DNA from: Scyliorhinus canicula | Lineage: Eukaryota | Reading direction: 5' to 3' | DNA length: 64,000 nt | Assembly (NCBI RefSeq): GCF_902713615.1 | Contig: NC_052161.1 | Span: 4,195,698-4,259,697 of the forward strand | Shown: positions 41,143 to 42,173 of the stretch, piece by piece | Layout of the letters: each line of letters opens with the position of its first letter | How positions within the stretch are numbered: position 1 is the stretch's first letter | Translations under genes and position numbers: made by a program | The notes under the pieces: generated by a model | The model's database searches: none | Seen by the model: the letters and a program-made list of their open reading frames with translations, nothing else | Told to the model about the DNA's origin: nothing

Positions 41143-42173
41143 CTGTGAAGAATAAACAACTTAGTCAGTACAGCTCTATTCCAGAATCTAGATACCAACA
41201 TCTGTTCCACACAAGATACCTTTGCAGTTTCAAACTCATTTGCTACTGAAGGCACCGTACCATGTAAAGCAACCTCAGTTTAAGTAACAGAGGAATCAAT
41301 TAAATGTTTTAAGTGGGGAACTAGCTGCTCACTTCTGAAAAGGGCCTCATTTTTACACTTTAAAATGACTCAATGCCAACCAGTATCAACAGCAGCAAAT
41401 ATGTAAAATTATAAATGTACTTGCTATGCAAAATTTGTGTTTAAGGTTTTTTTTTTTAAAAAAAGGACAAATGAACTCTGCTGGAGGTGGGGGAAGGGGT
41501 GGGAGAAAGGAAATTTCAGGGAGGAGGTTTGGTCTGGAGAGGGTTAACTGGCTGATGAAGCCGTGCATCCCAAGCTTCTTCGCAAGCGCGGTTTCGCAGG
41601 CTGCGCGCAAAAGCACCTGTAGGGAAGAAAAGAAAAACAGCGCAGCGAAACTCCATGAATATTTTAGCAAAACCAGGAAGATTCAGCAGTATCCAAGTCA
41701 AAGTCATCTTTCTCTGTGGTGCCACACATTTGTGGCACACCTATGATTACCAGTGAAAAGCCAACCTAAATTTCTCTTCACTTTAATTCAAGCATCTTGT
41801 GCATTCCCTCACCCCCCCAATCCACCCATACTTTGGAGCTGAATATTCACTTTATATCATGGTCATGTTTGTTCATGGAACTTCGAGACCAAAGCAAGCA
41901 AGCCGCGCCAGCGCAAGCGCGAGGTAAACGCTGCGCGACCTGAAAGGAACGTTTTGTGAAAGACAAATACAAACTAAAATTTGTAGCGCAGGCGCAATGG
42001 GATTCCAGCATCTCCTTCCAACTGAAAAGAAAGCAAATTAGTGCCAGTACCAAATGTACCAGATTCTGTTAGGGAAACCAGCTAGCCATCAACAGACCAA
42101 TCCTTTCTTTTTGTTTTAAGTTTTCTTTCTCTCAAAATGAAAAAACATCAGTCACCGGGAATTCGTGGAATAC
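41143..42173 (-). promoter_or_regulatory. OGA intron 11: candidate detained intron with decoy/poison splice elements
   Basis: 1031 nt, no recognisable TE, weak donor CAG|GTATTC, three internal polyY-YAG acceptors (exon starts 42021, 41939, 41616), duplicated CpG-rich module. Confidence 0.6.

What the first reader, a model, noticed from the sequence alone, without database searches (positions are those of the whole stretch)
41143..42173. OGA intron 11 looks like a dedicated decoy/poison-splicing control intron
Seen: 1031 nt with no recognisable TE, between 9-kb and 13-kb TE-packed introns. The donor is weak (CAG|GTATTC). Three internal acceptors have long polypyrimidine tracts: ctttcttttcAG|42021, cgttcctttcAG|41939 and ttttcttttcttccctacAG|41616. 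Every non-canonical outcome hits a stop in the exon-11 frame: retention gives [13 protein letters not shown], 42021 gives LEGDAGIPLRLRYKF*, 41939 gives 30 aa then TGA (41847-41849), and 41616 gives 76 aa then stop. Knowledge (recalled, to be verified): mammalian OGT intron 4 and an OGA intron, recalled as 11, are O-GlcNAc-responsive detained introns, and OGT uses decoy exons. Inference: a cis-element array tuning productive OGA splicing, apparently already present in cartilaginous fish.
Basis: partly seen in the sequence, partly recalled or inferred. Interest (0 to 1): 0.85.

Follow-up and report, generated by a model that had tools for sequence, protein, structure and literature searches.

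The report
Shark copy of OGA's regulated intron
This 1-kb shark intron matches the intron of the O-GlcNAcase gene that human cells hold back unspliced to tune enzyme levels; its false splice sites and a folded RNA core are conserved from sharks to bats, so the control device is about as old as jawed vertebrates.

Summary
OGA lies on the minus strand. Exon 11 is 42174-42259 (86 nt), intron 11 is 41143-42173 (1031 nt) and exon 12 is 41038-41142. The weak donor, the three acceptor-like sites and all four stop positions are exactly as stated. The stop argument carries no weight, because almost any entry into the intron meets a stop.

Published work shows that human OGA exon 11 is flanked by two conserved, O-GlcNAc-responsive detained introns (Tan 2020). 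I fetched the gene from seven other vertebrates. Intron 11 stays 0.8-1.2 kb in all eight species. It aligns end to end among elasmobranchs. With intron 10, it is the only shark intron that gives convincing hits in bowfin, frog, bird and bat.

The three acceptor-like sites are conserved. The 42021 site corresponds to the acceptor of a 59-nt cryptic poison exon reported in human DI2.

New here are nested long-range RNA helices that enclose or mask the three sites. The intron's longest invariant runs are helix arms, and the consensus fold beats column shuffles (z about -9).

Retention and use of the cryptic sites in shark RNA could not be shown, because read filters removed the relevant contigs. 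My verdict is an ortholog of a known regulatory intron, with undescribed structural detail. The scan's only other notes on this element concern this same window.

The parts
42174..42259 (-). OGA exon 11: an 86-nt cassette exon that shifts the frame when skipped
   Evidence: The nucleotide sequence is identical in 4 elasmobranchs and about 89-97% identical in bowfin, frog, bird and bat, counted by eye from the alignment. Skipping it gives WLAFVAN then stop. Its acceptor has no pyrimidine tract (score 3.2), and that weak acceptor is conserved in all 8 species.
41143..42173 (-). Intron 11, the ortholog of human detained intron DI-2
   Evidence: Its length is 819-1214 nt in 8 species, although gene size ranges from 12.6 to 67 kb.
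42148..42173 (-). Weak 5' splice site with a conserved downstream block (GTATYnnnTAYGAATTC)
   Evidence: Donor score is 4.7; GTAT and the following block are conserved.
42078..42104 (-). Helix A, 5' arm (core TTGGTCTG, invariant in 8 species)
   Evidence: (I1).
42022..42043 (-). Pseudo-acceptor 1: branch-point-like CACTAAT, pyrimidine tract and AG. An exon starting here would begin at 42021
   Evidence: It is homologous to the acceptor of the bat (and, by the length match, human) 59-nt DI2 exon. In the fold the tract pairs with the downstream GAAGGAG block.
41985..42019 (-). Conserved purine block GGAAGGAGATGCTG, followed by AUCCCA and CpG block 1
   Evidence: Predicted partners are the pyrimidine tract of acceptor 1 or 41557-41572, and the AG|GU of acceptor 2.
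41929..41951 (-). Pseudo-acceptor 2, with AG|GT followed by GTCGCGCAGCG. An exon starting here would begin at 41939
   Evidence: TTTGCAG|GTYGCRCAGC is present in the other 7 species. In one search, columns 438-446 pair with 503-512 and so mask the AG. The window species has lost a G here and has a 6-8 nt deletion in the partner arm.
41903..41922 (-). CpG block 2
   Evidence: CpG columns are shared by 6-8 of 8 species.
41870..41885 (-). Helix B, 5' arm (core TCCATGA, invariant)
   Evidence: (I6).
41662..41869 (-). Variable loop closed by helix B
   Evidence: not alignable between sharks and bony vertebrates; the B-B' distance is about 120-220 nt.
41639..41661 (-). Helix B, 3' arm, followed by GCTGCGCT
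   Evidence: a 15-16 bp helix with 13-15 pairs in every species. The closing pair occurs as C-G, U-A and G-C.
41578..41638 (-). Pseudo-acceptor 3: a 20-nt pyrimidine tract, CAG|GTGCT and CpG block 3. An exon starting here would begin at 41616
   Evidence: It is the strongest acceptor-like site in the intron (17.4). The tract is kept in all 8 species, mostly through T/C exchanges.
41525..41572 (-). 3' arms of the outer helices: UGGGAU, CGGCUUC, and helix A 3' arm with invariant CAGACCAA
41143..41524 (-). 3' part of the intron, with branch-point-like TACTGAC (41164-41170) and the true acceptor
   Evidence: It is conserved among elasmobranchs only. CpG observed/expected is 0.08, against 0.90 in the core.
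41038..41142 (-). OGA exon 12 (105 nt)
   Evidence: In one search, record 8 of run X1 is a spliced exon 12-13 contig at depth 95.

Best explanation
The stretch is the shark ortholog of OGA detained intron 2 (DI-2). In human cells, DI-2 and intron 10 flank the weakly defined 86-nt exon 11, and their splicing responds to O-GlcNAc levels.

**Shown here.**
- The architecture is conserved from elasmobranchs to mammals. Exon 11 is near-identical at the nucleotide level. Its acceptor lacks a pyrimidine tract, and its donor is weak (GTAT-type).
- The intron stays about 1 kb and holds a 650-nt core.
- In order, the core contains: helix arm A; pseudo-acceptor 1 plus a purine block; a CpG block; pseudo-acceptor 2 (AG|GU); helix arm B; a variable loop; arm B'; pseudo-acceptor 3 (a strong tract with AG|GU); a CpG block; and arm A'.

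**Inferred mechanism.**
- The pseudo-sites engage early splicing factors (U2AF, U2 and, at the AG|GU sites, U1) without giving a productive product. This slows removal of the intron, so the transcript is detained.
- The nested helices set how exposed these sites are and bring the two ends of the core together.
- A trans factor sensitive to O-GlcNAc shifts the balance between three outcomes: productive exon 11-12 joining, exon 11 skipping (a stop 6 codons into exon 12, hence decay), and rare use of the cryptic sites (all give early stops).
For: **Literature.** PMC7261177 describes two conserved O-GlcNAc-responsive detained introns around exon 11, and a premature stop on exon 11 skipping. PMC12894984 reports a 227-bp sub-DI2 and a 59-bp DI2 exon at predicted cryptic sites.

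**Orthology and constraint.**
- Exon 11 and its weak sites are conserved in 8 species.
- Intron 11 measures 819-1214 nt in all of them.
- It aligns over 100% of its length among elasmobranchs, against 0-46% for the other introns.
- Introns 10 and 11 give all the shark-to-bony-vertebrate blastn hits but one, and those hits are colinear. The exception is a single 21-nt intron-14 hit in the bat at E = 0.002, which I treat as spurious.

**Pseudo-sites.** The three sites are conserved and top-ranked in each species. The bat homolog of site 1 bounds a 59-nt exon with its donor at +226. Skipping exon 11 gives a premature stop in the shark.

**Structure.**
- RNAalifold recovers helices A/A' and B/B' and helices that cover the pseudo-sites, from two different alignments.
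- Consensus energy is -62, against -19.9 +/- 4.6 for 100 column shuffles. The result is the same with one shark plus four bony vertebrates (z = -9.1).
- 91% of cells are paired, against 33-48% when partners are slid. 10 of 46 long-range pairs show double-sided changes.
- The three longest invariant runs are TTGGTCTG, CAGACCAA (its exact reverse complement) and TCCATGA.
- CpG observed/expected is 0.90 in the core, against 0.40 for the window.

**RNA hints.**
- Run X1 is RNA, because it holds a spliced exon 12-13 contig at depth 95.
- That contig begins exactly where the spliced and unspliced forms diverge.
- The index says X1 and X3 hold about 0.8 of the words of 40900-42400 and 0.95 of those of 42300-43800. 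Little of intron 12 was laid.
Against: - There is no direct evidence from shark RNA.
- The raw run X23 barely covers OGA.
- In the relative's run X12, introns 11 and 12 have similar low depth (2.6-5.4).
- The AG|GU sites score poorly as donors (1.6 and 5.8), so U1 engagement is speculative.
- Sharks lack the GT that closes the 59-nt exon in the bat.
- The core arms of helix A are invariant, so they show no covariation. One internal position is a mismatch in all species.
- Only 8 sequences from about 5 independent lineages were available.
- Sense and antisense consensus energies differ little (-62 against -55.5).
- The single-sequence fold has z = -0.84.
- The splice-site matrices were typed from general knowledge and are not MaxEnt models.
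Confidence: 0.8

Rival explanations
1. The conserved blocks act at the DNA level. They would form an intragenic enhancer, an alternative promoter, or a cluster of CpG-rich factor sites (GCGC-NN-GCGC, resembling NRF1 sites). The splice-site look and the helices would then be incidental.
For: CpG observed/expected is 0.90 in the core, and nine CpG columns are shared by 6-8 species. Chiloscyllium carries TGCGCATGCGC, and other species carry GCGCATGC-like strings. Antisense consensus energy is nearly as good as sense.
Against: - The pyrimidine tracts are kept mostly through T/C exchanges rather than by fixed sequence. This fits an RNA-level tract, not a factor site.
- Helices A and B contain no CpG motifs. 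Helix B keeps pairing through G-U pairs and through C-G, U-A and G-C exchanges.
- In human cells the homologous sites are used as splice sites (PMC12894984).
- The two roles are not mutually exclusive.
Confidence: 0.1
2. The sites belong to real alternative exons that make tissue-specific short or variant OGA proteins, not to decoys.
For: The sites look like good acceptors. OGA has known short isoforms and, in intron 10, a conserved in-frame 54-nt alternative exon.
Against: The reading frames after the sites are not conserved. Bat and bird start with TAA directly after acceptor 1, and the shark tails are 15, 30 and 76 residues of unrelated sequence. Indels between species are not multiples of three. 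No isoform annotated in the fetched species uses them.
Confidence: 0.05
3. The intron hosts a structured non-coding RNA, such as a snoRNA-like or other processed RNA, and the helices belong to that product.
For: There is a strong conserved-structure signal.
Against: No Rfam family matches at E up to 1 on either strand. The structure spans about 580 nt and includes a non-conserved loop of 120-220 nt. The conserved motifs are splice-site-like.
Confidence: 0.03
4. It is an ordinary intron in a slowly evolving genome, and the acceptor-like AGs are chance.
For: Shark genomes evolve slowly. Stops after any entry point are expected.
Against: 150 invariant columns and ordered blocks are shared with bowfin, frog, bird and bat. 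Apart from one 21-nt chance-level intron-14 hit, no intron other than 10 gives any hit. The 41616 site exceeds everything in 32.6 kb of control intron.
Confidence: 0.02

Closest known systems
Human/mouse OGA detained intron DI-2 (intron 11), with DI-1, flanking exon 11 (Tan et al. 2020, PMC7261177)
   Same: - It sits in the same position, between the 86-nt frame-shifting exon 11 and exon 12.
- Exon 11 skipping gives an early stop.
- Ordered conserved blocks are shared with a mammal (bat).
- Intron length is similar: 952 nt in the bat and 1031 nt in the shark.
   Different: - Detention and the O-GlcNAc response are shown only in mammalian cells, not here.
- Shark intron 10 has grown to 9 kb, against about 3.1 kb in the bat.
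- Details differ: the shark donor is GTATTC and the tetrapod donor GTATCA.
- The window species has degraded both arms of one small helix at pseudo-acceptor 2.
[quoted passage not shown]
   Same: The acceptor-like site at 42021 aligns with the acceptor that bounds an exactly 59-nt segment in the bat, whose donor lies at +226. The downstream AAGGAGATGCTG block is shared.
   Different: Elasmobranchs, frog and bird have no GT at the homologous donor position. In the eight species compared, only the bat (TTTAG|GTATAC) and the bowfin (GGTTAG|GTCTTG) have one. The shark site therefore cannot define the same exon. Human sequence itself was not examined; the bat stands in for it.
OGT intron 4 detained introns with a decoy/poison exon and intronic splicing silencer (Park 2017, PMC5588854; Parra 2018; Govindan and Conrad 2025, PMC12017769)
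   Same: Both are deeply conserved intronic elements in an O-GlcNAc cycling gene. Both have cryptic splice sites inside a detained intron, with outcomes that end in early stops.
   Different: It is a different gene with no sequence relation. In OGT the central exon is the poison; in OGA the central exon (11) is the productive one. A decoy role for the OGA sites has not been tested.
Recursive splice sites (pyrimidine tract-AG|GTAAGT)
   Same: Pseudo-acceptors 2 and 3 have AG directly followed by GT, conserved in most species.
   Different: The GT side scores poorly as a donor (1.6 and 5.8; bowfin has GA). The intron is only 1 kb, whereas known vertebrate recursive sites lie in very long introns.

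Membership tests
OGA detained intron DI-2 (ortholog) | Lies between the 86-nt exon 11, whose skipping shifts the frame, and exon 12 | tested here: met
   exon 11 is 86 nt, and skipping gives WLAFVAN then stop.
OGA detained intron DI-2 (ortholog) | Intronic sequence conserved across vertebrates far above neighbouring introns | tested here: met
   150 invariant columns in 8 species, and convincing cross-class hits only for introns 10 and 11.
OGA detained intron DI-2 (ortholog) | Raised intron read depth in polyadenylated (nuclear) RNA compared with other introns | tested here: inconclusive
   (index shares of 0.8-0.95 in run X1, which is shown to be RNA, and in X3) set, where nothing was laid, probably because of filtering. 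X12 shows no difference from intron 12.
OGA detained intron DI-2 (ortholog) | Splicing responds to O-GlcNAc level (OGT or OGA inhibitors) | not testable with these tools
   Needs treated shark or ray cells, or a minigene.
Decoy exon / decoy splice sites within a retained intron (Parra 2018 type) | Conserved cryptic 3' splice site(s) inside the retained intron | tested here: met
Decoy exon / decoy splice sites within a retained intron (Parra 2018 type) | A paired cryptic 5' splice site that defines a short exon | tested here: inconclusive
   The bat has a 59-nt exon with a GT donor. Sharks lack that GT. The AG|GT sites are weak donors.
Decoy exon / decoy splice sites within a retained intron (Parra 2018 type) | Removing or blocking the decoy lowers intron retention; spliceosome components bind it | not testable with these tools
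   Needs mutagenesis, antisense blocking or CLIP.
Recursive splice site | Strong 5' splice site recreated directly after the AG | tested here: not met
   Donor scores are 1.6 (41939) and 5.8 (41616); the bowfin has GA at both.
Rfam RNA families | Match to a curated covariance model | tested here: not met
   no match at E up to 1 in 40000-43500, on either strand.

The most novel reading that the evidence does not exclude
The core of OGA intron 11 is an RNA device about 450 million years old. Nested long-range helices (A/A', B/B' and the CpG-block pairings) hide or expose three decoy 3' splice sites. This folded element would be the long-sought cis target through which O-GlcNAc levels set OGA intron detention and exon 11 inclusion. 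Alternative pairings of the GCGCAGC and GCUGCGC blocks would act as the switch.
Probability: 0.35. Interest if true: 0.7.

Novelty: new member of a known kind. Interest (0 to 1): 0.5.

Why it matters
O-GlcNAc homeostasis depends on feedback splicing of OGT and OGA. For OGA, the papers read here say the mechanism is still unclear and point only to 'extremely conserved' intronic regions. The shark copy shows that the whole arrangement predates the split between cartilaginous and bony fishes.

The eight-species comparison also reduces 1 kb of intron to a short list of testable elements. These are three pseudo-acceptors, two invariant complementary 8-mers, a 15-bp helix with compensatory changes, and CpG blocks. 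That list gives concrete mutations for minigene work and targets for antisense modulation of OGA, a drug target in neurodegeneration.

The phenomenon itself is not new. The value lies in its depth of conservation and in the structural map.

Tried and rejected
- **Reads, second attempt.** The call on 39200-42169 laid nothing over intron 11 for X1 and X3, although the index shares are about 0.8. The raw run X23 had almost no OGA reads. Retention and cryptic junctions in shark RNA therefore remain untested. Both read tools are now at their caps.
- **Gene look-ups.** The look-up of encoding contigs failed for the isoform X2 proteins and for the coelacanth. The Mustelus locus had no DNA. No holocephalan, coelacanth, lamprey or human sequence was compared.
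- **Rfam.** The scan found nothing.
- **Single-sequence fold.** It is not better than shuffles (z = -0.84). The structural case rests on the comparative analysis only.
- **The count of structure pairs.** I did not use it, to avoid pasting a 1000-character bracket string. Equivalent counts and slid controls were scripted instead.
- **Stop-codon argument.** Rejected as uninformative.
- **Recursive-splice-site reading.** Rejected because the donors are weak.

Full report
**1. What is at the coordinates**

The window carries the O-GlcNAcase gene (OGA/MGEA5) on the minus strand.
- tblastn with vertebrate OGA proteins places 11 exons between about 59.3 kb and 21.0 kb. Identity to shark OGAs is 90-91% overall, and no listed species matches exactly.
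- The finding lies between an 86-nt exon (42174-42259...[11 protein letters not shown]) and a 105-nt exon (41038-41142, [14 protein letters not shown]...).
- Exon 10 ends at 51215, so intron 10 is 8955 nt. Intron 12 is about 13.1 kb.

This covers the donor CAG|GTATTC, the three tract-AG sites, and the four read-through peptides with their stop positions.

**2. Is it more than chance?**

I scored sites with a simple acceptor weight matrix typed from general knowledge, so the numbers are approximate.
- The 41616 site scores 17.4 and the 42021 site 10.6.
- Four internal sites reach 9 or more, against 1.1 per kb in 32.6 kb of sense-strand introns from the same gene.
- No control site reaches 15, and no shuffle reaches 17.4.
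- The genuine sites around exon 11 are weak: exon 11 acceptor 3.2, exon 11 donor 4.7 and exon 12 acceptor 8.0.

The claim that every non-canonical outcome meets a stop is true but empty. Only the last five in-frame entry points avoid a stop, and the median run is 13 codons.

**3. Literature**

Tan et al. 2020 (PMC7261177) show the following.
- Human OGA exon 11 is flanked by two detained introns whose levels respond within hours to OGT or OGA inhibition.
- Exon 11 skipping gives a premature stop and nonsense-mediated decay.
- Both introns are 'extremely conserved across vertebrates'. The mechanism is called unclear.

A 2026 paper (PMC12894984) reports two cryptic events in human DI2 under compound Y-33075. 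One is a 227-bp 'sub-DI2' left by an alternative 5' splice site. The other is a 59-bp DI2 segment used as a poison exon. Both lie at computationally predicted sites.

A 2012 mouse study lists the Mgea5 exon-skipping isoform as an NMD target (PMC3446288).

In the library searched, I found no description of a conserved RNA structure in OGA DI-2. That does not prove none exists.

**4. Cross-species comparison**

Using an OGA protein found with the large exon, I fetched the gene from seven species: Chiloscyllium punctatum, Heptranchias perlo, Narcine bancroftii, Amia calva, Spea bombifrons, Cinclus mexicanus and Pteropus.

- **Exon 11.** It is identical in nucleotide sequence in all four elasmobranchs. 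Counted by eye from the alignment, it is about 89-97% identical in the four bony vertebrates, including at synonymous sites.
- **Its weak splice sites.** The tract-less acceptor (CGCTTGGATCTGATC..AACAG|GG) and the weak GTAT-type donor are conserved.
- **Intron length.** Intron 11 measures 1031, 1015, 1033, 949, 1214, 819, 858 and 952 nt, while the gene ranges from 12.6 to 67 kb.
- **Among elasmobranchs.** Intron 11 aligns over 100% of its length at 71-81% identity. The other introns align over 0-46%.
- **Against bony vertebrates.** Shark introns 10 and 11 give all the significant hits but one, and these are colinear and in the homologous intron. The exception is a single 21-nt intron-14 hit in the bat (E = 0.002), which I treat as spurious.

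The MAFFT alignment shows an ordered set of blocks shared by all eight species:
- the region just after the donor;
- GGATTGGTCTG;
- pseudo-acceptor 1 with AAGGAGATGCTG and a CpG block;
- TTTGCAG|GTYGCRCAGC (pseudo-acceptor 2);
- GAAGYTCCATGA;
- TTCATGGANTTT;
- a long pyrimidine tract ending CAG|GTGCT (pseudo-acceptor 3) with a further CpG block;
- CCCTCTYCAGACCAAACCT.

In each species the three homologous sites are among the top internal acceptor-like motifs. In the bird and the bat they are exactly the top three. The tracts differ mostly by T/C exchanges, which is what selection for a pyrimidine tract predicts.

In the bat, the homolog of the 42021 site opens a segment of exactly 59 nt, closed by TTTAG|GTATAC, with the donor at +226. 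This matches the human 59-bp exon and 227-bp sub-DI2. The match rests on length, because human DNA was not examined. Elasmobranchs, frog and bird lack that GT; only the bat and the bowfin carry one at the homologous position.

**5. Conserved RNA structure**

The window's own inverted repeats I1 and I6 turn out to be the conserved blocks. RNAalifold on my alignment and, independently, the fold_alignment tool on another alignment both predict nested long-range helices.
- **Helix A/A'** joins 42078-42104 to 41525-41551. Its core is UUGGUCUG/CAGACCAA.
- **Inner helices** link the purine block and AUCCCA to 41557-41572.
- **A helix pairing GCGCCUGCG with UGCAGGUCGC** covers the AG|GU of pseudo-acceptor 2.
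- **GCAGCG pairs with CGCUGU**, just upstream of the tract of pseudo-acceptor 3.
- **A local hairpin** pairs the tract of pseudo-acceptor 1 with GAAGGAG (seen).
- **Helix B/B'** has 15-16 bp (41870-41885 with 41646-41661). It closes a loop that is not conserved in sequence and varies from about 120 to 220 nt.

Helix B keeps 13-15 pairs in every species. Its closing pair occurs as C-G, U-A and G-C, and several positions switch between G-U and A-U or G-C.

The statistical support is as follows.
- Consensus energy is -62 kcal/mol, against -19.9 +/- 4.6 for 100 column shuffles.
- The result is the same with one shark plus the four bony vertebrates (z about -9; 0 of 60 shuffles as good).
- 91% of cells pair, against 33-48% with slid partners.
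- 10 of 46 long-range pairs carry double-sided changes, against 1-7 in slid controls.
- The three longest runs invariant in all eight species are TTGGTCTG, its exact reverse complement CAGACCAA, and TCCATGA.

The caveats are these.
- Only about five independent lineages were sampled.
- The helix A core cannot show covariation because it never varies.
- The GCGC-rich blocks can pair promiscuously.
- The antisense fold is nearly as good (-55.5).
- The shark sequence alone does not fold better than shuffles.

One anecdote is worth recording. The window species has lost the G of TTTGCAG at pseudo-acceptor 2, and it also carries a 6-8 nt deletion in the predicted partner arm.

**6. CpG content**

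Twenty of the intron's 24 CpGs lie in the 426-nt core. CpG observed/expected there is 0.90, against 0.40 for the window and 0.08 for the 3' part of the intron. Nine CpG columns are shared by 6-8 species. This shows strong constraint. It also keeps a DNA-level role (a factor-binding cluster) open as a secondary or additional reading.

**7. RNA evidence in the shark**

This evidence is weak.
- The second call, on 39200-42169, showed that run X1 is RNA. It holds a spliced exon 12-13 contig at depth 95.
- That contig starts at 41145, which is exactly where the spliced and unspliced forms begin to differ.
- No contig was laid over intron 11 in X1 or X3, although the index credits them with about 0.8 of the words of 40900-42400 and 0.95 of those of 42300-43800.
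- The likely reason is that contigs containing the human-like exon 11 are dropped, and the tool itself warns that a hole proves nothing.
- Little of unique intron 12 was laid in X1 (163 nt at depth 2.5), and none in X3.
- In the related species' run X12, introns 11 and 12 have similar low depth.

I therefore treat detention in sharks as inferred from orthology, not as observed.

**8. Verdict**

The element is the ortholog of a published regulatory intron, so it is a new member of a known kind.

This follow-up adds three things:
- conservation of the whole arrangement back to the root of jawed vertebrates;
- the mapping of the shark 42021 site to the mammalian 59-nt cryptic exon acceptor;
- a nested-helix model that encloses three conserved pseudo-acceptors.

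The scan's other notes on this element (s1-286383, s1-286487, s1-286488) concern the same window. Nothing comparable was noted on other DNA.

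Noticed in passing
window 49360-49413 (minus strand), inside intron 10: There is a 54-nt in-frame alternative exon (D-RRILSTSYYSCGIDNAR-W) with an AG acceptor and a GTACGA donor. It is annotated as isoform X1 in Mustelus, Rhincodon, Heptranchias, Narcine and coelacanth. It sits inside an intron-10 block (about 49255-49500) that also gives hits in bowfin, frog, bird and bat.
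   Followed up: partly
window 50576-50621, 50199-50280 and 42265-42334 (intron 10): These further intron-10 blocks are conserved between the shark and bony vertebrates. The last one is the 70 nt directly upstream of exon 11, with its tract-less acceptor. Tan et al. mention a human short OGA isoform made by alternative polyadenylation in this intron.
   Followed up: no
window 40289-40896 (intron 12): This repeat is very highly represented in RNA contigs of both organisms, with summed depths up to about 13,000 and many variant copies. Reads are often clipped at 40342, 40679 and 40747. It is probably an expressed SINE-like or other transposable-element family.
   Followed up: no
window 42174-42259: Exon 11 is conserved at synonymous positions from sharks to a bat. 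This suggests RNA-level constraint on the exon itself, through splicing enhancers or silencers or through pairing, beyond its coding role. The same stretch is what trips the read tool's human-similarity filter.
   Followed up: partly
L002 (Heptranchias perlo), protein P0274: The annotated isoform X4 (802 aa) reads from exon 12 into intron 12 (...RPYFPKDEDFRLPVPFETNQ...). This points to a possible truncated OGA lacking the acetyltransferase-like domain in a shark.
   Followed up: no
window 26.4-38.3 kb (intron 12) and 29.7-35.7 kb: There are many long ORFs on both strands with low-complexity or reverse-transcriptase-like translations, plus an N run near 36.7-36.9 kb.
   Followed up: no
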